Numbered from the stretch's first letter, positions 9,259 to 39,835 are shown. The stretch: 64,000 bases of DNA from Octopus sinensis (GCF_006345805.1 NW_021833068.1:25618-89617), one strand, 5' to 3'. The notes: a model not told the origin generated them from the sequence alone. Numbers and translations: made by a program.

Positions 9259-9821
9259 TTTCGAACTGCCAGATGTAGAGGGGTGTCACCCTCGAGGTTC
9301 ACCTTATTGATATCGATGCCTTTCTGTTTCAGGAGAAGTTCAACAACTTCCGTGCGTTCACGAGTAGAGGCAAGATGTAGAGGGGTGTTACCTTGCTTGG
9401 TCACAGCATTAACATCCGTGCCATTCTGTTGCAGGAGAAGTTCAACAACGTCCTTGCTTCCATTGCGACAGGCAAGATGGAGAGCTGTCTGACCATCTTC
9501 CTTCACAGCTTTAACATCCGTGTCTTTATCTTGCAGGAGAAGTTCAACAACGTCCTTGCTTCCATAGCGACAGGCAACATGGAGAGCTGTCCAACCATTT
9601 TCCATCACAGCTTTAACATCCGTGCCATTCTGTTGCAGGAGAAGTTCAACAACGTCCTTGCTTCCATTGCGACAGGCAAGATGGAGAGCTGTCCAACCTT
9701 TGTTCTCCACAGCATTAACATCCGTGTCTTTATGTTTCAGGAGAAGTTCAACAACGTCCTTTCTTCCATAGCGACAGGCATCATGCAGAGCTGTCGAACC
9801 CAATTTATTTTTCTGATTAAC
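9259..9821 (-). CDS. Ankyrin exon A1 (563 nt = 257 + 3x102)
   Basis: cttttttag acceptor and gtaagt donor, phase 0 to 2. Open frame of 34-aa repeats (GxTALHxACRxGSKDVVELLL). Confidence 0.92.
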
Positions 9822-10275
9822 CTAAAAAAGATAAAAAATAAAGACATTAAAGATGGTGTTTATTGGGGGAAGAAGGAAAGAAAATGAAAAATGTCAGAGA
9901 AACAGAATCAGATTAATTTAAACAGGTGGAATGAAGGTGGGGGGAAAATAAATGAGATTTATAATGTATCTATACACACACACATCTGTGTATGCATATA
10001 TATATATATATACACTCTCGCACATACATATATACATAAATACCTATATATACATACGTGTTTTATATCTTCACTGATCATTTGTTTATGCATTTTTGTG
10101 TATATATGCGTTTATGTGTGTGTATATTTGTGTATGTATGTACAGGTCTGTGTGAGCTGAAGAAAAGTTTTTAATTAAAAAAATATAAATATAAACTGTT
10201 TCATATACATATAACACAAACCAACATACATATCTTTATACACACACACACATATATATATATATATTCGCTGAC

Positions 10276-10432
10276 CTGTAAATTGTTATTTTCTTTGCTA
10301 TTTAACAGGACTTTGACTACATCTTCATAGTTATTCCCCACAGCCCAATGTAGAGGTGTGTTGCCAAATGAGTCCTGCTTATTAACATTTGCTCCACTGG
10401 AGACTAAGAAGGCCACAACATCAGTTTTGTGG
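10276..10432 (-). CDS. Ankyrin exon B1: HKTDVVAFLVSSGANVNKQDSFGNTPLHWAVGNNYEDVVKVLLNSKENNNLQ
   Basis: ttttcttcctttcag acceptor and gtcagc donor. 157 nt, phase 2 to 0. Confidence 0.9.
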
Positions 10433-11460
10433 CTGAAAGGAAGAAAAACAAACATAAAACATCACATTCACTTAATAATTACATTAAATATACACTCGTG
10501 TTCCATTAAATGCATAAAAACCTATGTATACTACAGCCTCGTGTGTGTATATATATAAATATATATGCAAATATGTATGTATGTAGAGGCAAACCTACAC
10601 AAATGTGCCCCAGGCGAATGTTTCCTTGTAACTTCTAGAAAAATGGATGTTTTTCAATGAATTTTCTTTCACAAATATCCTTCAGATGGCAAATATTCCA
10701 ATTATATCGGAATTTGTTGTGAGAAAAAACTTTTCGGTGGGTGGAGAGAGAAATTTAGTAAAGTTCAACCGAGTCGGCTTTCTTTCCAAAAAAATAGATA
10801 TTTTCAAATGAAATTTTCAATAAAACCGTTTCAGATGGTGAAGATTTCGATTATATCGGAATTTAATATGAAGAAAATTATAAAAGTTGGTGGATTCGCA
10901 CAGATATACACTAACACAAAACAGAAAATAAGAAGATGAACTTTGGGAAAATAACCGTGATGTGTGTCAGTATGTATGTGTGCGAAACCATAAAATTTTT
11001 AAAGTTTTTTCATGTTAAATTCCGATATAATCCTAATCTACACCATTTGAAAGGGATTTGTAGAAATTTTCACAGAAACAAAATATCCACTTTTCTGAAA
11101 GTTATAGAAAAACAAAACGGATTTGGGTGAATTTTGAGAAAGTCAACTCCTCAACGTTTGTTGAAAATTTGTTTTTACAACAATTCCGATATAATTGGAA
11201 TCTTCATCATCTGAAGCATTTTTGTCAAAGAAATTTCATTAAAAAATATCCATTTGTCTCAAAGTTATAAGGAAACAAATTCGTCGTGGGGCCCAGTTGT
11301 GTACGTATGCCTATACATATGCACGCATATATATATTTATATGATCTCGAGTATCGAGTACCTACGTCTGGCTAGCGCGCACGCGCGAATCCGCGTGTGC
11401 GCGACCGGGACCACTCTGCGATAATGTCAAAGTCAATAATATTATACAGGTGTATATGTG

Positions 11461-11491
<31 letters not shown>

Positions 11492-12157
11492 GCATGTATG
11501 TGTATGTATGTATATATATATGTATGTATATAGAGAGACAGACAGACAGAGAAATATGAGCCACTGAAATACGTATAATCGTTAATACACAGTAAACAAA
11601 TGTGTACGTGGGTACTTGTCTATTGTCGTGGTCCCGGTTACGCACGCGCGAATTCGCGCCAGACGTAGGTGCCTGTCGTGGGATGAGGTTCGATATCAAC
11701 TTCGCTTGCCTCAACAGGTCTTTGTGTATAAATGTATAAATTTTTCGCACTAAATTCTTTCCGTAGAATTTATCAAAAAACGCGCAAAATTATTCCGTAG
11801 AATTTATCAAATTAAAAAACGCAAAATTAATATATTTTTTGAAATTGCAAATTATTTAGAATATAAAACAAATGAAGTTAAATTTTAAAAATAAATGTCA
11901 TATACTTATACTCTGTAAGGTGCTGTGTTCACACTTCAATTTACTATTTTCTAGAAATGTTGCCTTTCTAATTGAAACAATTTTCTCAATCTCCATTTAA
12001 AAGTCCATAATGCCTCTTGAGCCATATCAAAATGAACAATTTGAATACGCGGCGGCGGTGGTGGTGGTGGTGGTTGTGTGAGGTTCTAATTTTTTCTGAT
12101 CTCTCTTTGCCCCCCTAGATGGAGTTGTGGTGGGGAGACAGATGAAAGATGTTTCAT

Positions 12158-12196
<39 letters not shown>

Positions 12197-12859
12197 CCTA
12201 CACGATATAGTCTATAAATTTGGGAGTTTTTGAAAGATATATATTTTGTCATCAGATATATATACTTTCTCACACTACAATTAAGATATATTTATTTTAA
12301 ATCGTTCATCTTTTCCCGCGACAACAAAAATTGGGCGCGAAAATTTTTCTAAATATTAGCGGAATGAACAACTGAGATAAAGAGGGGGCAAAGAGAGATC
12401 AGAAAAAAAAATTAGAACCTCACACCACCACCACCACCGCCGCCGCCGCGTAATTCAAAGTTGTTCATTTTGATATGGCTCAAGAGGCATTATGGACTTT
12501 TAAATGGAGATTGAGAAAAATTGTTTCAATTAGAAAGGCAACATTTCTAGAAAATAGTAAATTGAAGTGTGAACACAGCACCTTACAGAGTATAAGTATA
12601 TGACATTTATTTTTAAAATTTAACTTCATTTGTTTTATATTCTAAATAATTTGCAATTTCAAAAAATATATTAATTTTGCGTTTTTTAATTTGATAAATT
12701 CTACGGAATAATTTTGCGCGTTTTTTGATAAATTCTACGGAAAGAATTTAGTGCGAAAAATTTATACATTTATACACAAAGACCTGTTGAGGCAAGCGAA
12801 GTTGATATCGAACCTCATCCCACGACAGGCACCCACGCCAACCCCCTTTGCTTGCGAAG

Positions 12860-13200
12860 ACATGTTGGGGCAAGTGTGGCACCCGGCAAATGCCAGGACC
12901 CCTGGACTGGTGGTACGTAAAAAGCACTATCCGAATCGTGGCCGATGCCAGAGCCGCCTCGACTGGCACCAATCCGACCGTGGCCGTTGCCAGCCTCTCC
13001 TGGCACCTGTGCGGGTGGCATGTAAAAAGCACCCACTACACTCTCGGAGAGTGGTTGGCGTAGGTTAGGAAGGGATCCAGTTGTAGAAACATTGCCAGAT
13101 AAGACTGGAGTCTGGTGCAGCCTTCTGGCTTCCCAGATCCCCGGTCGAACCGTCCAACCATGCTGGCTGGAGAACGGACGTTAAACGATGATGATGATGA
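12860..13200 (+). mobile_element. 5'-truncated RTE 3' UTR copy with (GAT)n tail
   Basis: Shares ccgaccgtggccgttgccagcctc/tggcacctgtg motifs and the tail with 53793-54150 in the opposite orientation. Confidence 0.7.
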
Positions 13201-13244
13201 GAAGAAATTAATTCATTAAGTTTACAAATTAATACTCTTACTCT

Positions 13245-13585
13245 TTCTCTTTTACTTGTTTCAGTCATTTGACTGCGGCCATGCTGGAGCACCGCCTTTT
13301 AGTACTTATTCTATCGGTCTCTTTTGCCGAACCGCTAATAACGGGGACATAAGCACACCAGCATGGTTGGCAATGCTAGGGGGACAAACACAAACACACA
13401 CATACAAATATATATATATATATATATACGACAGGCTTCTTCAGTTTCCGTCTACCAAATCCACTCACAAGGCTTTGGTGGCCCGGGGCTACAGTAGAAG
13501 ACACTTGCCCAAGATTGCCACGCAGTGGGACTGAAACCCGGAACCATGTGGCAGGAGACAAGCTACTTACCACACAGCCACTCCT
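13245..13585 (-). mobile_element. tRNA-derived SINE
   Basis: The minus-strand start aggagtggctgtgtggtaagtagcttg...ggtttcagtcccactg matches the SINE head at 44544. Confidence 0.7.
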
Positions 13586-15826
13586 CGCGCTGTAAAAAAA
13601 AAAGTTTCACAAATTATATACATTCGCGTTTGTGTAAAAAATTATTAACCAAGTTTATAAATTATTATTTGTTCAAAAATATTATTAATATTAATTAATT
13701 TTCAAGAATTATTTAATTTATATAATTAATTCATTAATTTTATTCTGTAAAATAGTAATTAATTCATTTATCTGTAAATCCGCGAGGAAAGCGACTATGT
13801 AATTTTTTTGTGTAAAATTGAAAATGTTATATATACACACCACACACACACACATATATATTTTTAGTGAAATCCAACACCTTTTTTTTTAGGGGGGGGG
13901 GGGTAACGCGCATGCGCGAATTCTGCACTGTGCATGCGCAAGTCACCTCGTAGGATCTCGAGTATCGAGCACCTACGTCTGGCGCGCGCGCGCGCGAATT
14001 CGCGTGTGAGAAACCGGGACCACGACAATAGACAAGTACCAATATTTATATATATATGTGTGTGTGTGTATATATGTTAAACTCCAGTGTTTGACTCGAG
14101 CAAAAAAAAATTGTGCAATAGGTGTAAAATAAAATGTAAAACGAATATGTAAAAAAAAAATACACTCTGGCGAACGAGGGGCGGTGGAGACGACTCGAAA
14201 AATTCACACGATCAATCTCACAGGATCCGAAAACTACATGTTGTTTTACACCTATTACACTTTTTGTTTTCATTTTTGGGACCGGTTGTCGAGTGGGGTT
14301 ACCGGATCGTGTGAATCATCCGAGTCCGCACCCCAGATATACACTGACACAAAACAGAAAATAAAAAGATGAACTTTGGGAAAATAACCGTGATGTGTGT
14401 CAGTATGTATGTGTGCGAAACCATCAAATTTTTAAAGTTTTTTCATGTTAAATTCCGATATAATCCTAATCTACACCATTTGAAAGGTGTTTATGGTGGA
14501 AAAAATATTAGGTGGAAAAAATCAACAGCATAATATAGTGAAATAGCAACATAATAACAATAACAACAATAATAATACAGTACAATGCAAAACATTATAG
14601 ATCAGCAAATACATATAAATGAAAAATATTGATTGACATCAGCAAAATCCAGAAGTGTACATGCATATAAGGGCATACAAGTCAGACTTTTGACGGTGAT
14701 ATATATTAAGTGGTAAGTTAGAAATGATTTAAGATTGAAAGCTCAATAGGATTGACTGGAACATTTGAATTTCAATTGTCTCCGTTACGGTTGGTTTATT
14801 AAGATACACTTACATACATACACACGTATATGTGCGCTTATACATATATACAAGATAAACCAAAAAGACAGAAAATACAAGCTTACATACACACATACAT
14901 ACATAACTACGTACGTATAGATCCATATATATATATATATATATATATATAAACAAATACATATACCCGAAAACAACCACGCACACATATATGTATATAT
15001 ACATACACATACATACTGTTAACTAAAATAGTATTAAGAATCATTAAAATTAAGATAATATTAATTGTTAATACAACGAAAGGGGTTGGAAGGGTAATTC
15101 GTAATATACAAAAAAGAGGGCCTAAAAGGGTAGAAAAAGGTAAGGGTTAATAAAAGGCAAAGGTTGGAAATATTGAGATAAAATTTATAAGAAGGGTATA
15201 AACTCAAAACACAGATTTACCATAACCAGTGTAAAGAAGATGTAGGTTATTTGCATAAGATACATAATTAAAAATTACACCACATATTCCGTAAACAATC
15301 AGAAGACTAGGAAACCGTCCAGATATCAACACTTGTAAATTTTATCTGAATATTTTCCAACAGTAATCAGACACAAGAACAGGAGTAAAGAGGGGGGACA
15401 ATCTATTAATGAACCCCTGGATATTACTGGTACAGATTTTGAGCCAGGAGTTGAACTTGGAACACAAACGGATCAAAGTAAGGGGATGATTCTGCATTTA
15501 GCCCAGGGCCAGGAGGAAAGAGGAAAATTTCAAGAGAAGGTGGGGGATGAGGTGTTTTACATGGAATGAAAGGAAGAAGGGAGAGGATTTGAACCTGTAA
15601 CGTTGAGGTAACGAAGGATGAGATGAAGTAAAGAATCCAGTCAGGTAACATCAACAACAATAATTATGAGGATTAATAATGAAGTTAGATTAGTGTCATT
15701 AGAGTGTGAGAGAGAGAGGTGAAGCATGACGACCCATGGTGGGATTATGACATGAATGACTCGAAACAAGAAAAACAAAGATTAAAGAAAACAGATTTGG
15801 ATAATCCAAATCCATTGGGGACTTAC

Positions 15827-16088
15827 TTTTGAACTGCCAGATGGAGAGGGGTGTCACCCTCTTCGTCCACCTTATTGGATTGATGCCATTTTGTTGCTGG
15901 AGAAAATCAACAACAACTTCCTTGTGTCGATGAGCAGAGGCAAGTTGTTGTAGAGGGGTGGAACCTTGCTTGGTCTCAGCTTTAACATCCGTGCCATTCT
16001 GTTGCAGGAGAAGTTCAACAACGTCCTTGCTTCCATAGCGACAGGCAAAATGGAGAGCTGTCCAGCCCAATTCATTTTGCTGATTAAC
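15827..16088 (-). CDS. Ankyrin exon A2 (short type), frameshifted as assembled
   Basis: Splice sites are intact. It is 262 nt versus 257 nt in A4: two 3-nt slippage duplications and a 1-nt deletion. Confidence 0.7.
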
Positions 16089-16825
16089 CTAAATAAGATA
16101 AACAATAAAGACATTAAAGATGGTGTTTATTGGGAGAAGAAGGAAAAAAATGAAAAATGTCAGAAAAACAGAATCAGATTAATTTAAACAGGTGGAATGA
16201 AGGTTGGGGAAAATAAATGAGATTTATAATGTATCTATACACACACACATATGTGTATGCATATATATATATATACACTCTCGCACATACATATATACAT
16301 ACGTGTTTTATATCTTCACGGATCATTTTTTTATGCATTTTTATGTATATATGCGTTTATGTGTGTGTATATTTGTGTATGTATGTACAGGTCTGTGTGA
16401 GCTGAAGAAAGTTTTTAATTAAAAAAATATAAACTGTTTCGAGAAACTGGCGAACAAATAATTTCAGTTTTGTGAGACCAACTCCGAAAGATCACCCGTT
16501 TTTTTCCAATGAAATTTAACAGAAATCCACCCTTTTCAATGTTGTAGCAGCAAGAATTATGTGTGGATTGTGGGAAAGAAAGTGGAAAAGTGTGTGTTGA
16601 GGGTGGAAGGGTATTGATCTGCAACTCATCAAAGATATTTCATTACCATAATCATTATCTATAAACAAGGAAATGAGCAACTTTTATTTAAAAAATTAAA
16701 TCGTCAATAATGAAGAAACAGATTTGGGGCACTAAACTGTATGTATACATCATATACATAAAACACAAACCAACATACATAACTTTATACACACACACAC
16801 ACATATATATAATATATTCGCTGAC

Positions 16826-16980
16826 CTGTAAATTGTTATTTTCTTTGCTATTAACAGGACTTTGACTACATCTTCATATTATTCTTCACAGCCAGATGTA
16901 GAGGTGTGTTGCCCCCTGAGTCCTGCTTATTAACATTTCCTCCACTGGAGACTAAGAAGGCCACAACATCAATTTTGTGC
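16826..16980 (-). CDS. Ankyrin exon B2, frameshifted as assembled
   Basis: 155 nt versus 157 nt. Two single-T losses in T-runs relative to B4, otherwise matching B4. Confidence 0.7.
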
Positions 16981-18074
16981 CTGAAAGGAGAAAAAAAAAC
17001 AATGAAACATCACATTCACTTAATAATTACATCAAATATACACTCGTTTCCATTAAATGCATAAAACCTATGCATACTACAGCCTCGTGTGTTTGTATAT
17101 ATAATTATATATGCAAATATGTATGTATGTAGAGGCAAACCTACACAAATGTGCCCCAGGCGAATGTTTCCTTGTAACTTCTAGAAAAATGGATGTTTTT
17201 CAATGAAATTTCTTTCACAAATATCATTCAAATGGCAAATATTCCAATTATATCGGAATTGGTTGTGAGAAAAACCTTTTCGGTGGGTGGAGAGAGAAAT
17301 TTAGGAAAGTTCACCCGAGTCGGCTTTCTTTCCCAAAAAAATAGATATTTTCAATAAAACCGTTTCAGATGGTGAAGATTTCGATTATATCGGAATTTAA
17401 TATGAAGAAAATTATAAAAATTGGGGATTCGCACAGATATACACTGACACAAAACAGAAAATAAAAAGATGAACTTTGGGAAATAACCGTGATGTGTGTC
17501 AGTATGTATGTGTGCGAAACTATCAAATTGTTAAAGTTTTTTCATGTTTAAATTCCGATATATCCTAATCTACACCATTTGAAAGGTGTATTAGTTAGGT
17601 GGAAATATTAGGTGGAAAAATATTAGGTGGAAAAATATTAGGTGGAAAAAAATCAACAGCATAATATAGTGAAATAGCCACATAATAACAATAACAACAA
17701 TAATAATACAGTACAATGCAAAAACATTATAGATCAGCAAATACATATAAAATGAAAAATATTGATTGACATCATAGCAAAATCCAGAAGTGTACATGCA
17801 TATAAAGGCATACAAGTCAGACTTTGACGGTGATATATATAAGTGGTAAGTTTAGAAATGATTTAAGATTGAAAGCTCAATAGGATTGACTGGAACATTT
17901 GAATTTCAATGTCTCCGTTACGGTTGGTTTATTAAGATACACTTACATACATACACACGTATATAGCGCTTATATATATATACATAGATAAACCAAAAAA
18001 ACAGAGAAAATACAAGCTTACATACACATACATACATAACTACGTACGTATAGATCAATAGATATATATATATA

Positions 18075-18113
<39 letters not shown>

Positions 18114-18121
18114 TATATATA

Positions 18122-22494: not shown

Positions 22495-22542
<48 letters not shown>

Positions 22543-22646
22543 GAAGCATGACGACCCATGGTGGGATTATGACATGAATGACTCGAAACAAGAAAACAAA
22601 GATTAAAGAAACAGATTTGGATAATCCAAATCCATTGGGGACTTAC

Positions 22647-26450: not shown

Positions 26451-26492
<42 letters not shown>

Positions 26493-27369: not shown

Positions 27370-27626
27370 TTTTGAACTGCCAGATGGAGAGGGGTGTCAC
27401 CCTCTTCGTCCACCTTATTGGCATTGATGCCATTCTGTTGCTGGAGAAAATCAACAACTTCCTTGTGTCGATGAGCAGAGGCAAGTTGTAGAGGGGTGGA
27501 ACCTTGCTTGGTCTCAGCTTTAACATCCGTGCCATTCTGTTGCAGGAGAAGTTCAACAACGTCCTTGCTTCCATAGCGACAGGCAAAATGGAGAGCTGTC
27601 CAGCCCAATTCATTTTGCTGATTAAC
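27370..27626 (-). CDS. Ankyrin exon A4 (short type, 257 nt)
   Basis: Open frame VNQQNELGWTALHFACRYG...GDTPLHLAVQ, phase 0 to 2. Confidence 0.9.
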
Positions 27627-28365
27627 CTAAATAAGATAAACAATAAAGACATTAAAGATGGTGTTTATTGGGAGAAGAAGGAAAAAAATGAAAAATGTCA
27701 GAAAAACAGAATCAGATTAATTTAAACAGGTGGAATGAAGGTGGGGGGAAAATAAATGAGATTTATAATGTATCTATACACACACACATATGTGTATGCA
27801 TATATATATATATACACTCTCGCACATACATATATACATACGTGTTTTATATCTTCACGGATCATTTGTTTATGCATTTTTGTGTATATATGCGTTTATG
27901 TGTGTGTATATTTGTGTATGTATGTACAGGTCTGTGTGAGCTGAAGAAAAGTTTTTAATTAAAAAAATATAAACTGTTTCGAGAAACTGGCGAACAAATA
28001 ATTTCAGTTTTGTGAGACCAACTCCGAAAGATCACCCGTTTTTTTTCCAATGAAATTTAACAGAAATCCACCCTTTTCAATGTTGTAGCAAAGAATTATG
28101 TGTGGATTGTGGGAAAGAAAGTGGAAAAGTGTGTGTTGAGGGTGGAAGGGTATTGATCTGCAACTCATCAAAGATATTTCATTACCATAATCATTATCTA
28201 TAAACAAGGAAATGAGCAACTTTTATTTAAAAAATATAAATCGTCAATAATGAAGAAACAAGATTTGGGGCACTAAACTGTATGTATACATCATATACAT
28301 AAAACACAAACCAACATACATAACTTTATACACACACACACATATATATATATATATTCGCTGAC

Positions 28366-28522
28366 CTGTAAATTGTTATTTTCTTTGCTATTTAACAGGA
28401 CTTTGACTACATCTTCATATTTATTCTTCACAGCCAGATGTAGAGGTGTGTTGCCCCCTGAGTCCTGCTTATTAACATTTCCTCCACTGGAGACTAAGAA
28501 GGCCACAACATCAATTTTGTGC
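28366..28522 (-). CDS. Ankyrin exon B4: HKIDVVAFLVSSGGNVNKQDSGGNTPLHLAVKNKYEDVVKVLLNSKENNNLQ
   Basis: 157 nt with intact splice sites. Confidence 0.9.
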
Positions 28523-29583
28523 CTGAAAGGAAGAAAAACAAACATGAAACATCACATTCACTTAATAATTACATCAAATATACACTCGTGTTCCATTAAA
28601 TGCATAAAAACCTATGTATACTACAGCCTCGTGTGTGTATATATAATTATATATGCAAATATGTATGTATGTAGAGGCAAACCTACACAAATGTGCCCCA
28701 GGCGAATGTTTCCTTGTAACTTCTAGAAAAATGGATGTTTTTCAATGAAATTTCTTTCACAAATATCATTCAAATGGCAAATATTCCAATTATATCGGAA
28801 TTTGTTGTGAGAAAAACCTTTTCGGTGGGTGGAGAGAGAAATTTAGGAAAGTTCACCCGAGTCGGCTTTCTTTCCAAAAAAATAGATATTTTCAATAAAA
28901 CCGTTTCAGATGGTGAAGATTTCGATTATATCGGAATTTAATATGAAGAAAATTATAAAAATTGGTGGATTCGCACAGATATACACTGACACAAAACAGA
29001 AAATAAAAAGATGAACTTTGGGAAAATAACCGTGATGTGTGTCAGTATGTATGTGTGCGAAACCATCAAATTTTTAAAGTTTTTTCATGTTAAATTCCGA
29101 TATAATCCTAATCTACACCATTTGAAAGGTGTATTAGGTGGAAAAATATTAGGTGGAAAAATATTAGGTGGAAAAAATCAACAGCATAATATAGTGAAAT
29201 AGCAACATAATAACAATAACAACAATAATAATACAGTACAATGCAAAACATTATAGATCAGCAAATACATATAAAATGAAAAATATTGATTGACATCATA
29301 GCAAAATCCAGAAGTGTACATGCATATAAAGGCATACAAGTCAGACTTTTGACGGTGATATATATTAAGTGGTAAGTTTAGAAATGATTTAAGATTGAAA
29401 GCTCAATAGGATTGACTGGAACATTTGAATTTCAATTGTCTCCGTTACGGTTGGTTTATTAAGATACACTTACATACATACACACGTATATATGCGCTTA
29501 TACATATATACATAGATAAACCAAAAAAACAGAAAATACAAGCTTACATACACACATACATACATAACTACGTACGTATAGAT

Positions 29584-29642
<59 letters not shown>

Positions 29643-29644
<2 letters not shown>

Positions 29645-32600
29645 AAGTAGAACTAAAAGAAGGACTGGAAGAGCTAAAGGAAAAGAAAAAGCTCAAGCAG
29701 GACCAAAGAGTGAAACAACCAGAAATAGAAGTGGATCCGCAAAGGATGGAACCAAACAGCGCACACGGGTGTGTATGTTCTACCTGAGAGGTTCCTGCTG
29801 GCATGGAAAGGAAGGTGCAGGCTGCCGCTTTGCACATCGGGGACCTTGCCACAGAGACACGAGGCAGATGGACAAACCATCAACACAAAGAAAAGGGATG
29901 GACCACGCACCACCTGCCCCAAAGCGGAGGTACGCAGATGTTGTGCGCGCCACAAACAGCCAACATGATGTTGTCGAAAGAGCAGCTGCTGAGCAACAAT
30001 CTTTTTTGTGCATGGCACAAAAGATTGTACAGCAGCTGACCTGGCTTCATCAAACCCAAGCCCGCAGGTGGGACTACCCACTATATACCAGACCACCACA
30101 GCAAACAGACACAGGATGGACACCGCCGTCAACAACGTACACCTCACCTCGATACTCCTACTGAACATCAGAGGACTGCAAACACTCAGTAACAGGACAA
30201 AGATCCCGTTCCTGAGAGACTTTGTTGCATGCAATCAAGCCTTATGCATAGCACTTACAGAAACGCACCTGAAACCGGACATAGCAGATGCGGAGTTACA
30301 CATACCACAGTATGCTGTACTACGGACCGACAGGAAAGAAAGGAGTCATGGAGGTGTTGCTATGTACATCCGTGAGGACCTCACACCCCAGGTCCTCTTG
30401 TCATACTCAAACTCGGTGTGTGACACACTAATTGTACATATTAGGCAACTTGATGTAGTTGTGTGTGCTACATATCGCCCTCCAGATGCCCCAAGCCATG
30501 TGGGCAAGTTTGAAGACTGCCTTATAAAAATAGAAGAAATTCTAACCACATTAGAACAACACATAGGTGTGCTTCTTATGGGAGACTTCAATCTGCCCAA
30601 TGTCAGATGGCCCGAGGGCCTTTCTCTCCCAGGAATGACAAGTTGTGAACGAGGACAGGCGAGGTCCCTCCTGAACCTCATCAACACCCTGTACATGGAG
30701 CAGGTAATACTCCAACCAACCAGGGCAGGTAACACACTGGATCTCTGCTTCACAAATGACATGGATCTCATCCATAATGTGAAAGTGACACCGACAATAC
30801 TCTCGGATCACAACATGATAGAGCTGACCATGTACGGGCCAAAAGAGAGCACGGACATGCAGCCTACAAGAAACCCTCAAAATCTTTCCAGCTTGAACTA
30901 CCATAAGGCAAACTGGAAACAAATTGAGAAAGAGATCCTCAAACAAAACTGGCCTGAATGTCTCTCCTCGCCAGACATCGACATGAAACTTCAACAATTC
31001 ATGTCTGTAATGCAAGCCATATGCTACAAATGTGTCCCAGAGAGAAAGGCCACTGTACACAAGAACAAAATCCCCAGAGAGAGGAAAATTTTAATGAGAC
31101 GGCGTACGAAATTTTCAAATCGCCTAAACAAACAGATTGAAAGCAGTGAAAAGTCCCGCCTAAAAATAAAACTGTTGGAAATCGAAAAATGTCTGCAACT
31201 CTCCCATGAAAAAGAAAGAGCAGACAAAGAAGCCTGGGCTATAGAAAACATAAAATCTAACCCCAGAGCTTTCTACATGTATGCCAAAGAAACAGCTACG
31301 GTGCACTGTAGGATAGGGCCACTCCTTGAAAAGGATGGCACACTCACAGGAAAAACAATGAGGGTAAGTGAAATACTGAATGAGCAATTCAAGAGTGTTT
31401 TCACTCCACCCCTTGGGCATTTCCAAATCACCAATCCAACTGACTTTTTTACCACTGCAGATATAAAATCAGAGGCGGCGACGATAGATTACATCGATAT
31501 AAAGGAAGACGATGTAACCAAGGCTATAGATGAAATGAAAACAGACTCAGCTACTGGCCCCGATGGATTCCCGGCAATCCTCCTAAAAGCATGTAAGAGA
31601 GTCCTAGCAAGACCACTGCAGTTCCTCTTTCAGAGCTTCCTTGCAGCTGGCAAACTTCCAGGAAAACTGAAGGAAGGAAGGTAAAATATGCCCCATTCAT
31701 AAAGGAGGTAGCAGAGCGGAAGCCAAGAACTATAGACCTATCTCTCTGACCTCACACATCAGCAAGGTCATGGAACGAATAGTCAGAAGGAAGCTGATCA
31801 CCTTCCTTGAAGAAAATACTTGCTGCCCGACACCCAACATGGTTTCCGACCAGGGAGAAGCTGTTTAACTCAGCTCCTACAACACTATGACTGGGTGCTG
31901 AAACGGCTGCTCAACCACTCAAATGTGGAAGTGATATATCTCGACTTTGCAAAGGCCTTTGATAAAGTCGATCATGGAATGATATGTCACAAACTGCGTG
32001 ATCTCAACATAGTTGGAAAACTGGGAGAATGGCTTCATGACTTTCTGAAGGATAGAAGTCAGGTGGTAGTAGCCAATGGGGCCACCTCCATTAACACACA
32101 AATAGTGAGCGGTGTTCCGCAGGGCACTGTTCTGGGACCACTACTGTTCATAATGGCCCTCTCAGACATGCCCTCAGCCACGCAGAGAGCCACGATCACA
32201 AGTTATGCAGATGATACAAAAGTTTCACAGGCAATACAGAACCCTGAGGACACTAAACACCTGCAATGTGAGCTAGACGAAATATAGAAGTGGGCTGAAA
32301 AGAATAGCATGCAGTTCAATGCTGGAAAGTTTCAAGCTTTATACTATCAGCATGCAAAACTGAATGCAATACCCAATGAATACACTGGACCCGGAGGGAT
32401 TGCAATCCCAGAGGCACAATCAGTGCGTGACCTGGGTATTCACATGAGTGATGACGCGACCTTTCATGTACATGTTGCTAAACTGGCAATGAAATGTAGA
32501 CGGCTGGCTGGATGGATTCTTAGAACCTTTAGAACAAGAGAACAAAAAACCATGATGGTCCTCTGGAAGACACTTGTCCTAAGCCACTTTGACTATCGCT

Positions 32601-33204
32601 CTCAGCTATGGTCACCATCCAGTGTCAAGTTGATCACAGAACTTGAGGCGATCCAACGAAGCTACACAAAGAAGATAGCCTCTATGCAGAATGTAAGCTA
32701 CTGGGAAAGACTCAAGAGATTAAAATTATATTCTCTGGAGCGTAGGCGGGAAAGATATGCCATAATATACATCTGGAAGATCCTGGAGGGAACTGTCCTG
32801 AACTTTGGCATCGAGAGTTACGCAAATGCCAGAACTGGGCGCCACTGCGTGGTGCCAAGGACTCCAAACCTGCCATCAAGATGTAGGACAAGATTCTGTG
32901 ATAGCCTGGGCTTCCGAGGCCCACAGCTCTTCAATATCCTCCCGAAGAACCTGAGAGACCTGCATGGGGTGGATACAGATGTCTTTAAAATGAAGCTGGA
33001 TCTCTTCCTGTCAGGTGTCCCAGATGAACCAACTTCACGGCAGGAGGGGCAGATGAGGGCAGCTGCATCGAACTCTCTCATGCACCAAATAGCAGTTGCT
33101 AGAAAGCCTCCATGAAGTGAAACCAAGTAGCAACACCAAATGGCGGTGCCCCAGCATGGCCACAGCTCATGAGCTGAAACTGGAATCAATCAATCAATCA
33201 ATCA

Positions 33205-33205
<1 letters not shown>
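29643..33205 (+). mobile_element. CR1-clade LINE copy 2 (ORF1 tail with CCCH finger; ORF2 APE-RT, disrupted)
   Basis: ORFs 29769-30164, 30008-31684, 31820-32287 and 32309-33115. QHGFRPGRSC, YLDFAKAFDKVDH, GVPQGTVLGPLLF and YADDTK motifs. (ATCA)n tail. Confidence 0.95.
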
Positions 33206-33243
<38 letters not shown>

Positions 33244-34003
33244 AACAAATACATATACCCGAAAACAACCACGCACACATATATGTATATATATACATAC
33301 ACATACATACTGTTAACTAAAATAGTATTAAGAATCATTAAAATTAAGATAATATTAATTGTTAATACAACGAAAGGGGTTGGAAGGGTAATTCGTAATA
33401 TACAAAAAAGAGGGGCCTAAAAGGGTAGAAAAAGGTAAGGGTTAATAAAAGGCAAAGGTTGGGAAATATTGAGATAAAATTTATAAGAAGGGTATAAACT
33501 CAAAACCCAGATTTACCATAACCAGTGTAAAGAAGATGTAGGTTATTTGCATAAGATACATAATTAAAAATTACACCACATATTCCGTAAACAATCAGAA
33601 GACTAGGAAACCGTCCAGATATCAACACTTGTAAATTTTATCTGAATATTTTCCAACAGTAATCAGACACAAGAACAGGAGTAAAGAGGGGGGACAATCT
33701 ATTAAATGAACCCCTGGATATTACTGGTACAGATTTTGACCCCAGGAGTTGAACTTGGAACACAAACGGATCAAAGTAAGGGGATGATTCTGCATTTAGC
33801 CCAGGGCCAGAGGAAAGAGGAAAATTTCAAGAGAAGGTGGGGGGTGAGGTGTTTTACATGGAATGAAAGGAAGAAGGGAGAGGATTTGAACCTGTAACGT
33901 TGAGGTAACGAAGGATGAGATGAAGTAAAGAATCCAGTCAGGTAACAACAACAACAACAATAATTATGATGATTAATTAATGAAGTTAGATTACAGTGTC
34001 ATT

Positions 34004-34041
<38 letters not shown>

Positions 34042-34145
34042 GAAGCATGACGACCCATGGTGGGATTATGACATGAATGACTCGAAACAAGAAAACAAAG
34101 ATTAAAGAAACAGATTTGGATAATCCAAATCCATTGGGGACTTAC

Positions 34146-34911
34146 TTTTGAACTGCCAGATGGAGAGGGGTGTCACCCTTGAGGTTCACCTTATTGACAT
34201 CCATGCCTTTCTGTTTCAGGAGAAAATCAACAACTTCCGTGCGTCCATGAGAAGAGGCAAGATGTAGAGGGGTGTAACCATGGTTGGTCACAGCATTAAC
34301 ATCCGTGCCATTCTGTTGCAGGAGAAGTTCAACAACATCCTTGCTTCCATAGCGACAGGCAAGATGGAGAGCTGTCCAACCATTTTCCGTCACTGCTTTA
34401 ACATCGATGCCATTCTGTTGCAGGAGAAGTTCAACAACATCCTTGCTTCCATAGCGACAGGCAAGATGGAGAGCTGTCCAACCATGTTCCTCACAGCCTT
34501 AACATCCGTGTCTTTATGTTGCAGGAGAAGTTCAACAACGTCCTTGCTTCTATAGCGACAGGCAAGATGGAGAGCTGTCGAACCATCTTCCATCACAGCC
34601 TTAACATCCGTGTCTTTATGTTGCAGGAGAAGTTCAACAACGTCCTTGCTTCCATAGCGACAGGCAAGATGGAGAGCTGTCGAACCATCTTCCATCACAG
34701 CTTTAACATCCGTGTCTTTATGTTGCAGGAGAAGTTCAACAACGTCCTTGCTTCCATAGCGACAGGCAAGATGGAGAGCTGTCGAACCATCTTCCATCAC
34801 AGCCTTAACATCCGTGTCTTTATGTTGCAGGAGAAGTTCAACAACGTCCTTGCTTCCATATTGACAGGCAACATGGAGAGCTGTTGCACTAAAATTATTT
34901 TTCTGATTAAC
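34146..34911 (-). CDS. Ankyrin exon A5 (766 nt; expected 767 = 257 + 5x102), one-base frameshift as assembled
   Basis: Splice sites are intact. It reads gttcctcac near 34489 where A3 has gttccctcac, a loss of one C from a homopolymer. Confidence 0.8.
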
Positions 34912-35328
34912 CTAAAAAAGATAAACAATAAAGACATTAAAGATGGTGTTTATTGGGGGAAGAAGGAAAAAAATGAAAAATGTCAGAGAAACAGAATCAG
35001 ATAAATTTAAACAGGTGGAATGAAGGTTGGGGGAAAATAAATGAGATTTATAATGTATCTATACACACACACATATGTGTATGCATATATATATATATAT
35101 ACACTCTCGCACATACATATATACATAAATACCTATATATACATACGTGTTTTATATCTTCACGGATCATTTGTTTATGCATTTTTGTGTATATATGCGT
35201 TTATGTGTGTGTATATTTGTGTATGTATGTACAGGTCTGTGTGAGCTGAAGAAAAGTTTTTAATTAAAAACATATAAATATAAACTGTTTCATATACATA
35301 AAACACAAACCAACATACATATCATTAT

Positions 35329-35360
<32 letters not shown>

Positions 35361-35368
35361 TCGCTGAC

Positions 35369-35525
35369 CTGTAAATTGTTATTTTCTTTGCTATTTAACA
35401 GGACTTTGACTACATCTTCATAGTTATTCCACACAGCCAGATGTAGAGGTGTGTCGCCCCATGAGTCCTGCTTATTAACATTTGCTCCACTGGAGACTAA
35501 GAAGGCCACAGAATCCGTTCGGTGG
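35369..35525 (-). CDS. Ankyrin exon B5 (same peptide as B3)
   Basis: 157 nt with intact splice sites. Confidence 0.9.
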
Positions 35526-35632
35526 CTGAAAGGAAGAAAAACAAACATAAAACATCACATTCACTTAATAATTACATCAAATATACACTCGTGTTCCATT
35601 AAATGCATAAAAACCTATGTATACTACAGCCT

Positions 35633-35665
<33 letters not shown>

Positions 35666-36541
35666 GTGCAAATATGTATTATGTAAAGGCAAAACTACAC
35701 AATTGTGCCCCAGGCGAATGTTTCCTTGTAACTTCTAGAAAAATGGATGTTTTTCAATGAAATTTCTTTCACAAATATCCTTCAGATGGCAAATATTCCA
35801 ATTATATCGGAATTTGTTGTAAGAAAAACCTTTTCGGTGGGTGGAGAGAGAAATTTAGGAAAGTTCACCCGAGTCGGCTTTCTTTCCAAAAAAATAGATA
35901 TTTTCAAATGAAATTTTCAATAAAACCGTTTCGGATGGTGAAGATTTCGATTATATCGGAATTTAATATGAAGAAAATTATAAAAATTGGTGGATTCGCA
36001 CAGATATACACTGACACAAAACAGAAAATAAAAAGATGAACTTTGGGAAAATAACCGTGATGTGTGTCAGTATGTATGTGTGCGAAACTATCAAATTTTT
36101 AAAGTTTTTTCATGTTAAATTCCGATATAATCCTAATCTACACCATTTGAAAGGGATTTGTAGAAATTTTCACAGAAACAAAATATCCACTTTTCTGAAA
36201 GTTATAGAAAAACAAAACGGATTTGGGTGAATTTTGAGAAAGTCAACTCCTCAACGTTTGAAAATTTGTTTTTACAACAATTTCCGATATAATTGGAATC
36301 TTCATCATCTGAAGCATTTTTGTCAAAGAAATTTCATTAAAAAATATCAATTTGTCTCAAAGTTATAAGGAAACAAATTCGTCGTGGGGCCCAGTTGTGT
36401 ACGTATGCCTATACATATGCACGCATATATATATTTATAGGATCTCGAGTATCGAGTACCTACGTCTGGCTAGCGCGCACGCGCGAATCCGGGACCACTC
36501 TGCGATAATGTCAAAGTCAATAATATTATACAGGTGTATAT

Positions 36542-36628
<87 letters not shown>

Positions 36629-37186
36629 GCATGTATGTGTATGTATGTATATATATATGTATGTATATAGAGAGACAGACAGACAGAGAAATATGAGCCA
36701 CTGAAATACGTATAATCGTTAATACACAGTAGACAAATGTGTACGTGTGTGTATATCATATTAATAGGTGAGGGTATAAAGTATAAATATTTTTATCCCA
36801 GCGAGTGTACAATAGAAAACAAGGATTAAGTACCGTTGTTAGTATCTATATATTTGGTATACATTGAAAAATGTATTGTAATCCTTTTGCGAAAGATGGA
36901 ATGTCTGAAAATTATAGACAAACTAATTGATAGCAGATTTCTCATCAATCTAAAAAATCAACAACAACAGCAGCACGTCGTAATTGGCGGGAAAACTACG
37001 TCTGCAAATGTAATGTTGTCATAGCAACAGACTATGCAAGAGAAAGTTTGCTGTTAAGGGCAACGAGGCGTATTTTTACCGCCAAAAGAAACAGTTAAGT
37101 ATGGCGGTCATATAACACACATAAATGAATATATAAACACACAAATATTTATTATATATATGTGTGTGTGTATACATATATATATT

Positions 37187-37219
<33 letters not shown>

Positions 37220-38976
37220 ATATGTTAAACTCCAGTGTTTGACTCGAGCAAAAAAAAATTGTGCAATAGGTGTAAAATAAAATGTATTAAACAAATATGT
37301 AAAAAAAAAATACACTCTGGCGAACGAGGGGCGGTGGAGACGACTCGGAAAATTCACACGATCAATCTCACAGGATCCGAAAACTACATGTTTTATACCT
37401 GTTACACTTTTTGTTTTCATTTTTGGGACCGGTTGTCGAGTGGGGTTACCGGATCGTGTGAATCATCCGAGTCCGCACCCCAGATATACACTGACACAAA
37501 ACAGAAAATAAAAAGATGAACTTTGGGAAAATAACCGTGATGTGTGTCAGTATGTATGTGTGCGAAACCATCAAATTTTTAAAGTTTTTTCATGTTAAAT
37601 TCCGATATAATCCTAATCTACACCATTTGAAAGGTGTATTAGGTGGAAAAAATATTAGGTGGAAAAAATCAACAGCATAATATAGTGAAATAGCAACATA
37701 ATAACAATAACAACAATAATAATACAGTACAATGCAAAACATTATAGATCAGCAAATACATATAAAATGAAAAATATTGATTGACATCAGCAAAATCCAG
37801 AAGTGTACATGCATATAAAGGCATACAAGTCAGACTTTTGACGGTGATATATATTAAGTGGTAAGTTTAGAAATGATTTAAGATTGAAAGCTCAATAGGA
37901 TTGACTGGAACATTTGAATTTCAATTGTCTCCGTTACGGTTGGTTTATTAAGATACACTTACATACATACACACGTATATGTGCGCTTATACATATATAC
38001 ATAGATAAACCAAAAAGACAGAAAATACAAGCTTACATACACACATACATACATAACTACGTACGTATAGATCCATATATATATATATATATATATAAAC
38101 AAATACATATACCCGAAAACAACCACGCACACATATATGTATATATATACATACACATACATACTGTTAACTAAAATAGTATTAAGAATCATTAAAATTA
38201 AGATAATATTAATTGTTAATACAACGAAAGGGGTTGGAAGGGTAATTCGTAATATACAAAAAAGAGGGGCCTAAAAGGGTAGAAAAAGGTAAGGGTTAAT
38301 AAAAGGCAAAGGTTGGGAAATATTGAGATAAAATTTATAAGAAGGGTATAAACTCAAAACCCAGATTTACCATAACCAGTGTAAAGAAGATGTAGGTTAT
38401 TTGCATAAGATACATAATTAAAAATTACACTACATATTCCGTAAACAATCAGAAGACTAGGAAACCGTCCAGATATCAACACTTGTAAATTTTATCTGAA
38501 TATTTTCCAACAGTAATCAGACACAAGAACAGGAGTAAAGAGGGGGGACAATCTATTAAATGAACCCCTGGATATTACTGGTACAGATTTTGACCCCGGG
38601 AGTTGAACTTGGAACACAAACGGATCAAAGTAAGGGGATGATTCTGCATTTAGCCCAAGGCCAGAGGAAAGAGGATAATTTCAAGAGAAGGTGGGGGATG
38701 AGGTGTTTTACATGGAATGAAAGGAAGAAGGGAGAGGATTTGAACCTGTAACGTTGAGGTAACGAAGGATGAGATGAAGTAAAGAATCCAGTCAGGTAAC
38801 ATCAACAACAATAATTATGAGGATTAATTAATGAAGTTAGATTAGTGTCATTAGAGTGTGAGAGAGAGAGGTGAAGCATGACGACCCATGGTGGGATTAT
38901 GACATGAATGACTCGAAACAAGAAAACAAACATTAAAGAAACAGATTTGGATAATCCAAATCCATTGGGGACTTAC

Positions 38977-39233
38977 TTTTGAACTGCCAGATGGAGAGGG
39001 GTGTCACCCTCTTCGTCCACCTTATTGGCATTGATGCCATTCTGTTGCTGGAGAAAATCAACAACTTCCTTGTGTCGATGAGCAGAGGCAAGTTGTAGAG
39101 GGGTGGAACCTTGCTTGGTCTCAGCTTTAACATCCGTGTCTTTATGTTTCAGGAGAAGTTCAACAACGTCCTTGCTTCCATAGCGACAGGCAAAATGGAG
39201 AGCTGTCCAGCCCAATTCATTTTGCTGATTAAC
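38977..39233 (-). CDS. Ankyrin exon A6 (short type, 257 nt; LLLKHKDTDV variant)
   Basis: Open frame, phase 0 to 2. Confidence 0.9.
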
Positions 39234-39678
39234 CTAAATAAGATAAACAATAAAGACATTAAAGATGGTGTTTATTGGGAGAAGAAGGAAAAAAATGAAA
39301 AATGTCAGAAAAACAGAATCAGATTAATTTAAACAGGTGGAATGAAGGTTGGGGGAAAATAAATGAGATTTATAATGTATCTATACACACACACATTTGT
39401 GTATGCATATATATATATATACACTCTCGCACATACATATATACATAAATACCTATATATACATACGTGTTTTATATCTTCACGGATCATTTGTTTATGC
39501 ATTTTTGTGTATATATGCGTTTATGTGTGTGTATATTTGTGTATGTATGTACAGGTCTGTGTGAGCTGAAGAAAAGTTTTTAATTAAAAACATATAAATA
39601 TAAACTGTTTCATATACATAAAACACAAACCAACATACATATCATTATACACACACATATATATATATATTCGCTGAC

Positions 39679-39835
39679 CTGTAAATTGTTATTTTCTTTG
39701 CTATTTAACAGGACTTTGACTACATCTTCATAGTTCTTCTTCACAGCCAGATGTAGAGGTGTGTTGCCCCCTGAGTCCTGCTTATTAACATTTGCTCCAC
39801 TGGAGACTAAGAAGGCCACAACATCAGTTTTGTGC
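39679..39835 (-). CDS. Ankyrin exon B6: HKTDVVAFLVSSGANVNKQDSGGNTPLHLAVKKNYEDVVKVLLNSKENNNLQ
   Basis: 157 nt with intact splice sites. First cassette in transcription order. Confidence 0.9.

What the first reader, a model, noticed from the sequence alone, without database searches (positions are those of the whole stretch)
9259..39835. Phase-symmetric B/A exon cassettes allow Dscam-like combinatorial splicing of the ankyrin surface
Seen: all B exons are phase 2 to 0 and all A exons are phase 0 to 2. Upstream exon C ends in phase 2, downstream exon E starts in phase 2, and splice-site contexts are near-identical between copies. Any B can therefore join any downstream A, and any A can join any downstream B or E. 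Counting alternating paths through (BA)x6 gives 233 in-frame routes, including total skipping, if all 12 exons are intact. Copies encode different surface residues, so the isoforms would differ in both length and binding face. Established: duplicated alternative exon arrays diversify receptors such as arthropod Dscam1. Inference only: whether skipping occurs cannot be seen from DNA, and constitutive inclusion of all exons is equally compatible.
Basis: partly seen in the sequence, partly recalled or inferred. Interest (0 to 1): 0.8.

Follow-up and report, generated by a model that had tools for sequence, protein, structure and literature searches.

The report
Six-fold ankyrin exon-pair array in octopus
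An octopus gene for an ankyrin-repeat RING ubiquitin-ligase-like protein carries six tandem copies of a two-exon ankyrin cassette where its closest relatives carry one. The copies fit together in frame because they are duplicates, and nothing in the DNA points to Dscam-style regulated exon choice.

Summary
The exons, phases, splice sites and coordinates are as described. B exons (157 nt) are phase 2->0, A exons (257-767 nt) are 0->2, C ends in phase 2 and E starts in phase 2. The count of 233 routes is arithmetically correct.

Three of the 12 exons (A5, B2, A2) are frameshifted in the given sequence, which leaves 50 in-frame routes. B3 and B5 are identical. The B2/A2 defects lie in a segment that looks like assembly consensus error.

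The phase symmetry is inherited, not independent evidence. The array is a tandem amplification of a 4.8-6.8 kb unit, introns included, and each B+A pair is a multiple of 3.

The gene is a member of an octopus family with ankyrin repeats, a RING finger and, in relatives, a Death domain. Two collinear Octopus vulgaris loci and all 14 family proteins examined have one B-A cassette.

I found no docking/selector RNA complementarity. Octopus sinensis RefSeq isoforms of a relative vary only outside the ankyrin region.

The copies differ mainly at canonical ankyrin binding-surface positions, and nonsynonymous change runs 3-6 times the intron rate.

Whether cassettes are skipped cannot be decided from DNA.

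The parts
47650..47733 (-). Exon 1a, coding start (MDVDKIISKIQNGDFKDVKRFIKKNPDQ), ends in phase 0
   Evidence: tblastn to the N-termini of P0011 and P0008 (79% and 69% identity); ATG and donor CAA|gtaagt
45589..45627 (-). Candidate alternative first coding exon 1b (MFHKKDSSICHET)
   Evidence: 93% identity to the N-terminus of P0002/P0003; donor ACG|gtattt
44039..44193 (-). Exon C, 155 nt, phase 0->2, 1.5 ankyrin repeats
   Evidence: Acceptor ttctcttcag|, donor AA|gtaagg; 90% amino-acid identity to P0080
39679..39835 (-). B6, 157 nt, phase 2->0, intact
38977..39233 (-). A6, 257 nt, phase 0->2, intact (short type, 2.5 repeats)
35369..35525 (-). B5, 157 nt, intact, identical to B3
34146..34911 (-). 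A5, 766 nt instead of 767: 1-nt loss (GGG->GG) near 34497, stops downstream; 7.5 repeats if the lost base is allowed for
28366..28522 (-). B4, 157 nt, intact
27370..27626 (-). A4, 257 nt, intact (short type)
23767..23923 (-). B3, 157 nt, intact
22647..23311 (-). A3, 665 nt, intact (6.5 repeats)
16826..16980 (-). B2, 155 nt: two 1-nt deletions in A runs, in-frame stops
   Evidence: lies in the indel-rich segment
15827..16088 (-). A2, 262 nt: +3, +3 and -1 relative to A4, frameshifted
   Evidence: lies in the indel-rich segment
10276..10432 (-). B1, 157 nt, intact
9259..9821 (-). A1, 563 nt, intact (5.5 repeats)
7261..7297 (-). Exon E, 37 nt, phase 2->0 (QHYDVVASMLAQ, second helix of the hybrid repeat)
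4334..4543 (-). Exon D, 210 nt, phase 0->0
2088..2263 (-). Exon F, 176 nt, phase 0->2
953..1095 (-). RING-finger exon, starts in phase 2 (zf-C3HC4_3); the gene continues beyond the window start
8335..42900 (-). Tandem array of six 4.8-6.8 kb units. It is organised as three long-A/short-A super-units of about 11.5-13.4 kb.
29130..33208 (+). Non-LTR retrotransposon in the A5->B4 intron, antisense to the gene, with APE endonuclease and RT open reading frames. A second copy with broken reading frames lies at about 17587-21693 in the A3->B2 intron.

Best explanation
The region is a tandem amplification of an in-frame two-exon ankyrin cassette (B+A) inside one octopus gene.

Gene model. The exon order is 1a - C - (B-A)x6 - E - D - F - RING exon, continuing beyond the window. 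Relatives end in a Death domain.

Origin (inferred). An ancestral single B-A unit, with breakpoints in the C-B and A-E introns, was multiplied by unequal crossing-over. It first gave a long-A/short-A pair and then about three copies of that pair. A LINE was carried along in two of the copies. Separately, a 102-nt (34-aa) repeat inside the A exon expanded and contracted.

Why the phases match. Each unit was copied with its introns, and B+A is a multiple of 3 (414, 720, 822 or 924 nt). All copies therefore share phases and splice sites by descent. Every in-frame junction rebuilds a normal ankyrin repeat, with helix 1 from the upstream exon and helix 2 from the downstream exon.

Selection (shown). 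The cassettes are not neutral junk. They differ mostly by nonsynonymous changes at canonical ankyrin target-binding positions, at several times the intron rate.

Expression (inferred, not shown). Ordinary exon-definition splicing should include most or all intact cassettes, giving a very long solenoid of up to about 38-40 repeats. Each B is probably tied to its own A across the short 445-739 nt intron. Occasional skipping of whole B-A pairs is the likeliest variation, rather than regulated Dscam-like choice. At least the unit-2 frameshifts are probably consensus errors of the assembly.
For: - Exon map, phases and splice sites.
- Units are repeated with their introns. Megablast identities are about 92-98%. 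Substitution distances in aligned non-coding parts are 0.012-0.037.
- A-exon lengths are 257 + n x 102 nt in the window. They are 461 and 359 nt at the two O. vulgaris loci.
- O. vulgaris loci L001 and L002 are collinear with the window from about 61 kb down to 3875. Flanks are 95-98% identical. Each locus holds one B-A unit.
- All 14 family proteins among the 120 best hits have exactly one B exon. No database protein covers two B exons of the query.
- Pfam finds ankyrin families plus zf-C3HC4_3. The hits span the C/B and B/A junctions. The relative P0008 adds a Death domain.
- Test isoforms with 0, 1 or 4 cassettes are all open.
- B exons have pN/pS above 1 in every informative pair.
- Nonsynonymous differences exceed the intron-rate expectation in 7 of 8 pairs (P = 0.00015 to 0.021).
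- Variable codons are enriched at DARPin-randomised positions (Fisher P = 0.009).
- Family-wide entropy peaks at the same positions, B codons 32, 22, 24 and 29.
- Differences between units 2 and 4 are almost all derived in unit 2. They have an indel-to-substitution ratio near 1:1: 27+22 against 4+3 outside the LINE, and 16+21 against 2+2 in the LINE part.
Against: - No transcript data were available, so the expression mode is inference only.
- As assembled, full inclusion meets a stop codon in A5.
- The window units do not form a clade separate from the O. vulgaris units. The array may therefore be older than it looks, or be shaped by gene conversion between paralogues. The O. vulgaris assembly may also have collapsed an array.
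- The excess of nonsynonymous change could partly come from gene conversion from more distant paralogues rather than selection on new mutations.
- The window is a mosaic relative to O. vulgaris. Its C exon resembles P0080, its F and RING exons resemble P0006/P0008, and collinearity with L001 and L002 breaks at 3875. Strict orthology of L001 or L002 is therefore not established.
Confidence: 0.7

Rival explanations
1. One reading: the array is a cassette library used by regulated or stochastic combinatorial splicing. It would produce many isoforms that differ in the length and binding face of the ankyrin surface, as Dscam1 does for Ig domains.
For: - Phase compatibility is real, and the junctions tried rebuild ankyrin repeats.
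- Cassettes differ at binding positions, with signs of diversifying selection.
- As assembled, full inclusion is not open, so some skipping would be needed if the frameshifts are real.
- Gene models of relatives contain phase-compatible skips: B->D in P0080, A->RING exon in P0002/P0003, and E->F in P0013.
Against: - No docking/selector complementarity was found.
- Units are multiples of 3 and structurally additive, so nothing enforces exclusivity.
- The collinear O. vulgaris loci and all family proteins examined have one cassette.
- O. sinensis RefSeq isoforms X1-X6 of a relative are invariant across the ankyrin region.
- Near-identical splice contexts follow from duplication, not from conservation.
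- The O. vulgaris models with skips are submitter predictions (CAI accessions) of unknown transcript support.
Confidence: 0.08
2. Part of the array is an assembly artefact. At least unit 2 (about 14.0-22.5 kb), and perhaps a whole 11.5 kb super-unit, would be a false or badly polished duplicate. The true copy number would then be lower and the B2/A2 frameshifts not real.
For: - The block 14.0-22.5 kb matches 25.5-34.0 kb with 0-4 mismatches per 500 nt in most bins, but 3-9 small gaps per 500 nt.
- The differences are almost all derived in unit 2, and indels are about as frequent as substitutions.
- 49 of 64 gap events are 1 nt long, and about half of those lie in homopolymers.
Against: - Units 1, 3, 5 and 6 differ by real structural features: 5.5, 6.5, 7.5 or 2.5 repeats in A, LINE present or absent, and different B codons.
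- Their substitution-to-indel ratios are normal.
- The mosaic identity pattern is typical of unequal crossing-over and gene conversion.
Confidence: 0.2
3. The array, or the whole gene, is decaying. The duplicated exons would be pseudo-exons, the frameshifts real, and transcripts that include them degraded by nonsense-mediated decay or never made.
For: - Three of 12 exons are frameshifted.
- A LINE sits in two introns.
- The gene is a mosaic relative to O. vulgaris.
- No matching protein is present in the databases searched.
Against: - Nine exons keep open frames and canonical splice sites.
- Nonsynonymous change is concentrated at binding positions and exceeds the intron rate, while the scaffold residues stay invariant. 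That is not neutral decay.
- The unit-2 defects look technical.
Confidence: 0.12
4. Protocadherin-like use: each B exon has its own upstream start, and each unit is spliced as an alternative 5' block to the constant E-D-F-RING exons.
For: Four models of relatives (P0006, P0014, P0055, P0079) start at MFVF(L/F)PFSH. That is an ATG in the polypyrimidine tract 23 nt upstream of the B acceptor. The same ATG is present upstream of B1, B3, B4 and B5 in the window. It is absent upstream of B6 (ATA) and B2.
Against: - Such starts are what gene predictors produce when the upstream exon is missed.
- No promoter evidence is available.
- An A exon of an upstream unit would still have to skip all downstream units.
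Confidence: 0.03

Closest known systems
Tandem exon-block amplification in repeat-domain genes (for example the NBPF Olduvai two-exon doublets, the nebulin triplicated eight-exon block, and titin Ig/PEVK exon blocks; from my own knowledge)
   Same: - A multi-exon unit is duplicated together with its introns.
- The unit length keeps the reading frame, and each unit adds whole structural repeats.
- Intron identity between copies is high.
- Copy number differs between close relatives (6 here against 1 at two collinear O. vulgaris loci).
   Different: - The domain is an ankyrin repeat, and the host gene is a cephalopod ANK-RING(-Death) family member.
- There are two nested levels of repeat expansion: a 102-nt intra-exon unit and the B-A cassette.
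- Expression of the copies was not shown here.
Dscam1 mutually exclusive exon clusters and other tandem-duplication-derived mutually exclusive exons (PMC6071210, PMC9013439)
   Same: The exons are tandemly duplicated and homologous, with matching phases. Their differences fall on the binding surface.
   Different: - Dscam variants substitute for one another, one per cluster, and the exon 6 cluster relies on docking/selector RNA pairing.
- Here the units are frame-neutral and additive.
- No docking/selector pairing was found.
- The array is absent from the closest loci examined.
Octopus ANK-RING-Death family: O. vulgaris CAI9744078-CAI9744133 on OX597842.1, and O. sinensis XP_029652223 and XP_036370076-79, labelled MIB2-like, ankyrin-3-like and similar
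   Same: - The exon plan is the same (1a, C, B, A, E, D, F, RING) with the same phases.
- Exon identity at the nucleotide level is about 90-95%.
- Flanks are collinear.
   Different: - The relatives have one B-A cassette, against six in the window.
- The window gene has no identical protein in the database.
- The Death-domain exons lie outside the window.
Long natural ankyrin solenoids: NOMPC and ankyrin-1/2 (best PDB matches 5vkq, 4rlv and 7tw3). From my own knowledge, NOMPC has 29 repeats and ankyrins have 24.
   Same: The repeat sequence is canonical. Many contiguous repeats form one binding groove.
   Different: A full-inclusion product would have about 38-40 repeats, more than either. Its domain context is a RING finger, not a channel or a spectrin-binding module.

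Membership tests
Dscam-like mutually exclusive exon array | Cluster of tandemly duplicated, homologous alternative exons | tested here: met
   Six B and six A exons sit in six tandem units.
Dscam-like mutually exclusive exon array | Exactly one variant per cluster is included in each mRNA | not testable with these tools
   No transcript data were available. Sequence logic argues against enforced exclusivity, because B+A is a multiple of 3 and multi-unit products stay open.
Dscam-like mutually exclusive exon array | Docking site outside the array that is complementary to a selector sequence next to each variant (competing RNA structures; PMC6071210) | tested here: not met
   I searched the unique introns C-B6, A1-E, E-D and the region upstream of C against the array. 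Only complementarities of 11-22 nt turned up, and all were AT-, CA- or CT-rich low-complexity matches at E>=0.3. G-U pairs and bulged helices were not searched exhaustively.
Dscam-like mutually exclusive exon array | Array conserved in related genomes | tested here: not met
   Two collinear O. vulgaris loci and 14 family proteins from three Octopus species have a single B-A cassette. Strict orthology of those loci is not proven.
In-frame tandem exon-block amplification of a repeat protein | Unit duplicated with its introns, at high non-coding identity | tested here: met
   Non-coding distances between units are 0.012-0.037, and 300-nt intron blocks are 92-100% identical.
In-frame tandem exon-block amplification of a repeat protein | Unit length is a multiple of 3 and its boundaries are in register with the structural repeat | tested here: met
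   157+257 = 414, 157+563 = 720 and 157+665 = 822 nt. Pfam ankyrin hits span the junctions.
In-frame tandem exon-block amplification of a repeat protein | Copy number differs from close relatives | tested here: met
   Six units here against one at L001 and L002.
In-frame tandem exon-block amplification of a repeat protein | The extra copies are expressed in mRNA | not testable with these tools
   No RNA data were available. No database protein contains two B exons.
Octopus ANK-RING-Death (MIB2-like) family | Ankyrin repeats followed by a C3HC4 RING finger | tested here: met
   Ank families score E = 1e-35 to 1e-68. zf-C3HC4_3 scores 41.7 bits against a cut-off of 27.
Octopus ANK-RING-Death (MIB2-like) family | C-terminal Death domain | not testable with these tools
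   The gene runs off the window start after the RING exon (953). The relative P0008 has a Death domain (34.8 bits).
Octopus ANK-RING-Death (MIB2-like) family | Shared exon plan and phases (C, B, A, E, D, F, RING) | tested here: met
   tblastn and blastn of the relatives onto the window and onto L001/L002.

The most novel reading that the evidence does not exclude
The six cassettes are all functional and are used in different combinations, either as whole B-A pairs or as cross-joined B_i-A_j. One germline gene of a RING/Death-domain signalling protein would then yield tens of isoforms with different ankyrin recognition surfaces. That would be a cephalopod, intracellular counterpart of arthropod Dscam1 diversification, perhaps in innate immunity.
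Probability: 0.07. Interest if true: 0.8.

Novelty: new member of a known kind. Interest (0 to 1): 0.35.

Why it matters
If the array is real, it shows how a repeat-protein recognition surface can grow and diversify quickly. Two nested expansion mechanisms are at work: a 102-nt intra-exon unit and a two-exon cassette. Change is concentrated at the target-binding positions.

The host family (ANK-RING-Death, clustered on O. vulgaris OX597842.1) is hypervariable at those same positions. I found no description of it in the searchable literature. Its architecture, a RING finger plus a variable binding module, recalls arms-race E3 ligases, so the family may deserve study in its own right.

For the scan, the main lesson is a caution. 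Phase symmetry in a tandem duplicate is automatic and is not evidence of regulated splicing.

Tried and rejected
- Docking/selector search. Exact 11-mers and blastn-short reverse-complement searches between the unique introns and the array gave only low-complexity matches. A ViennaRNA duplex scan timed out. The single test window that ran paired through a telomere-like CCCTAA tract and was not meaningful.
- Finding the window's own locus or species by exact-protein look-up of window ORFs (B3 ORF and an RT ORF). Nothing was on record.
- Fetching the loci of P0080, P0006, P0014 and P0002. P0080's range was too long, and the other three were not on record.
- Literature on this octopus family or on ankyrin exon arrays. 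None was found.
- Search for the 17-aa CPK mini-exons in window 1-952. None was found.
- The 'isoform X22/X14' names of the O. vulgaris proteins as evidence of many isoforms. I rejected this because they are CAI submitter entries with names that look transferred. The same 'isoform X14' name sits on different proteins (P0002, P0005, P0080), at least two of which map to different places on OX597842.1.

Full report
**What is there.**
- The window is AT-rich eukaryotic DNA (32-45% GC over most of its length) full of microsatellites and retroelements.
- A minus-strand gene spans it from 47733 to beyond position 1.
- Its exons are:
  - 1a: 47733-47650
  - candidate alternative 1b: 45627-45589
  - C: 44193-44039
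  - six B/A pairs
  - E: 7297-7261
  - D: 4543-4334
  - F: 2263-2088
  - RING-finger exon: 1095-953.
- Pfam finds ankyrin families (E down to 3e-68) and zf-C3HC4_3 (41.7 bits, cut-off 27) in a spliced one-cassette product. The relative P0008 also has a C-terminal Death domain.
- The best database hits are Octopus vulgaris, O. sinensis and O. bimaculoides proteins with the same architecture. They carry names such as MIB2-like and ankyrin-3-like. None is identical to the window product, and the best local identity is 66%.

**Check of the observation.**
- The reported limits are exact: B6 starts at 39835 and A1 ends at 9259.
- All B exons have the acceptor ...cctttcag| and the donor |gtcagcgaat. 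They are 157 nt and run phase 2->0.
- All A exons have the acceptor ...atctt(a/t)tttag| and the donor |gtaagtcccc. They run phase 0->2, and their lengths are 257 + n x 102 nt.
- C ends in phase 2, and E begins in phase 2 and ends in phase 0.
- The figure of 233 is the correct Fibonacci count.
- The intactness caveat fails, however:
  - A5 is 766 nt (GGG->GG near 34497, then stops).
  - B2 is 155 nt (two 1-nt deletions, with stops).
  - A2 is 262 nt (+3, +3, -1).
  - Without these three exons, 50 in-frame routes remain. Full inclusion as assembled meets a stop in A5.
- B3 and B5 are identical.

**Why the phases match.**
- The exons sit in six tandem units of 4.8-6.8 kb that were copied with their introns.
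- Blocks of 300 nt of intron are 92-100% identical between units.
- Substitution distances over about 2 kb of aligned non-coding sequence are 0.012-0.037.
- The units alternate between a long-A type (units 1, 3, 5) and a short-A type (units 2, 4, 6). This gives three super-units.
- A non-LTR retrotransposon (APE endonuclease plus RT) lies antisense in the introns upstream of B4 and B2.
- Each B+A pair is a multiple of 3 (414, 720 or 822 nt; 924 nt for unit 5 if its lost base is counted). Tandem copies are therefore frame-neutral automatically.
- Every permitted junction joins helix 1 of one ankyrin repeat to helix 2 of another. Pfam ankyrin hits run across the C/B and B/A junctions, and test isoforms with 0, 1 or 4 cassettes are all open.
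- The symmetry is thus a consequence of duplication. It is not an independent signal of regulated splicing.

**Comparison with relatives.**
- Two O. vulgaris loci on OX597842.1 are collinear with the window from about 61 kb down to 3875. These are L001 at 29.03-29.09 Mb and L002 at 28.35-28.42 Mb.
- Their flanks are 95-98% identical to the window and their units are 92-95% identical. Each contains one B exon and one A exon, of 461 and 359 nt.
- All 14 family proteins among the 120 best hits contain exactly one B exon.
- The query held two B exons, yet no hit covered both.
- The window units do not form a clade apart from the O. vulgaris units.
- The window is also a mosaic. Its C exon resembles P0080, its F and RING exons resemble P0006/P0008, and collinearity with L001 and L002 ends at 3875.
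- The cluster therefore evolves by duplication and exchange, and strict orthology is uncertain.
- In O. sinensis, five retrieved RefSeq isoforms (X1 and X3-X6) of one relative are identical throughout the ankyrin region. They differ only by 17-aa CPKxxEKAV cassettes between the RING finger and the Death domain.

**Tests of the Dscam analogy.**
- I searched for a docking site in the unique introns (C-B6, A1-E, E-D and upstream of C) that is complementary to a site present in every unit.
- Only AT-, CA- or CT-rich matches of 11-22 nt appeared, at E>=0.3. The published model for duplication-born competing structures (PMC6071210) is therefore not seen here.
- Units are additive rather than substitutive, so nothing in the frame enforces mutual exclusivity.
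- Some O. vulgaris gene models contain phase-compatible skips: B->D, A->RING exon and E->F. These are submitter predictions of unknown transcript support.

- Among the four distinct intact B sequences, 10 of 52 codons vary. Nine of those include amino-acid changes, and several involve two or three nucleotide changes (codons 22, 32, 29, 5, 2).
- pN/pS is above 1 in every informative pair.
- Nonsynonymous differences exceed what the intron distance predicts in 7 of 8 pairs (P = 0.00015 to 0.021).
- The variable codons are enriched at the positions randomised in designed ankyrin binders. That mapping comes from my own knowledge of DARPin design. Fisher P = 0.009.
- Across the family, the entropy peaks fall at B codons 32, 22, 24 and 29 (ANK positions 13, 3, 5 and 10) on an otherwise near-invariant scaffold.
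- The 34-aa repeats inside the A exons vary at the equivalent positions.
- The cassettes therefore look selected for different binding faces, or they received such differences by gene conversion.

**Quality of the assembly.**
- Unit 2 and unit 4 are near-identical in substitutions but differ by 64 gap events, 49 of them 1 nt long.
- With outgroups, the differences are almost all derived in unit 2: 27 indels and 22 substitutions against 4 and 3. In the LINE part the counts are 16 and 21 against 2 and 2.
- The noisy stretch runs from about 14.5 to 22 kb.
- Two tandem copies of equal age should not differ tenfold in rate, nor show a 1:1 indel-to-substitution ratio. The B2 and A2 frameshifts are therefore probably consensus errors.
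- The A5 frameshift is a single homopolymer loss in a cleaner region, and it remains undecided.

**Verdict.**
- The best reading is a tandem amplification of an in-frame ankyrin cassette in a diversifying octopus ANK-RING(-Death) gene family.
- I expect mostly inclusion, with possible skipping of whole B-A pairs. Only cDNA and accurate long genomic reads can settle this.

Noticed in passing
B exons of the window and family proteins P0001-P0080: Across the octopus ANK-RING-Death family, the B exon is nearly invariant except at four hypervariable codons (32, 22, 24, 29 = ANK positions 13, 3, 5, 10). This is the pattern of a recognition surface under diversifying selection. I found no paper describing this family.
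   Followed up: partly
O. sinensis XP_029652223 and XP_036370076-79 (alignment A1); outside the window: RefSeq isoforms of a relative differ only by inclusion of 0-3 tandem 17-aa CPKxxEKAVxxxxES segments, presumably mini-exons, between the RING finger and the Death domain. This is an annotated combinatorial cassette array in the same family, but not in the ankyrin part. No such segment lies in window 1-952.
   Followed up: partly
window 14500-22000: This segment has an excess of 1-nt indels relative to its twin at 25.5-34 kb. Almost all are derived in this copy, which suggests a poorly polished stretch of the assembly.
   Followed up: yes
window 29130-33208 and about 17587-21693, + strand: Two copies of a non-LTR retrotransposon. 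The first has a 558-aa ORF with an APE endonuclease domain, followed by RT ORFs. Each copy abuts a unit boundary. A related copy lies in O. vulgaris L002 at 3-2343.
   Followed up: partly
window 41175-42102: A 99-nt tandem repeat (about 9 copies, CA/CT-rich) lies in the C-B6 intron, just upstream of the array.
   Followed up: no
window 43470-43683: A telomere-like CCCTAA tract lies next to a 160-nt palindrome (43522-43683) in the C-B6 intron. The neighbouring 300 nt recur at 49384-49683, so a repeat element is probable.
   Followed up: no
window 54075-56206 and 56188-57923: A GC-rich 370-nt tandem repeat (about 6 copies) sits next to a minus-strand retroelement. The retroelement has an intact 419-aa RT ORF with a weak, sub-threshold PHD-like match.
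   Followed up: no
window 1-3875 versus L001/L002: Collinearity with both O. vulgaris loci stops at 3875. The downstream F and RING exons belong to a different subfamily type (CWWCQEKKATVTLHPC, 98% identical to O. vulgaris CAI9744133). The gene therefore looks like a recombinant between cluster members.
   Followed up: partly
window 45589-45627 and upstream of B exons (e.g. 10433-10455): There is a candidate alternative first exon 1b. In addition, an in-frame ATG lies 23 nt upstream of the B1, B3, B4 and B5 acceptors. It is absent upstream of B6 and B2. Several gene models of relatives use the equivalent ATG as their start (MFVFLPFSH).
   Followed up: no
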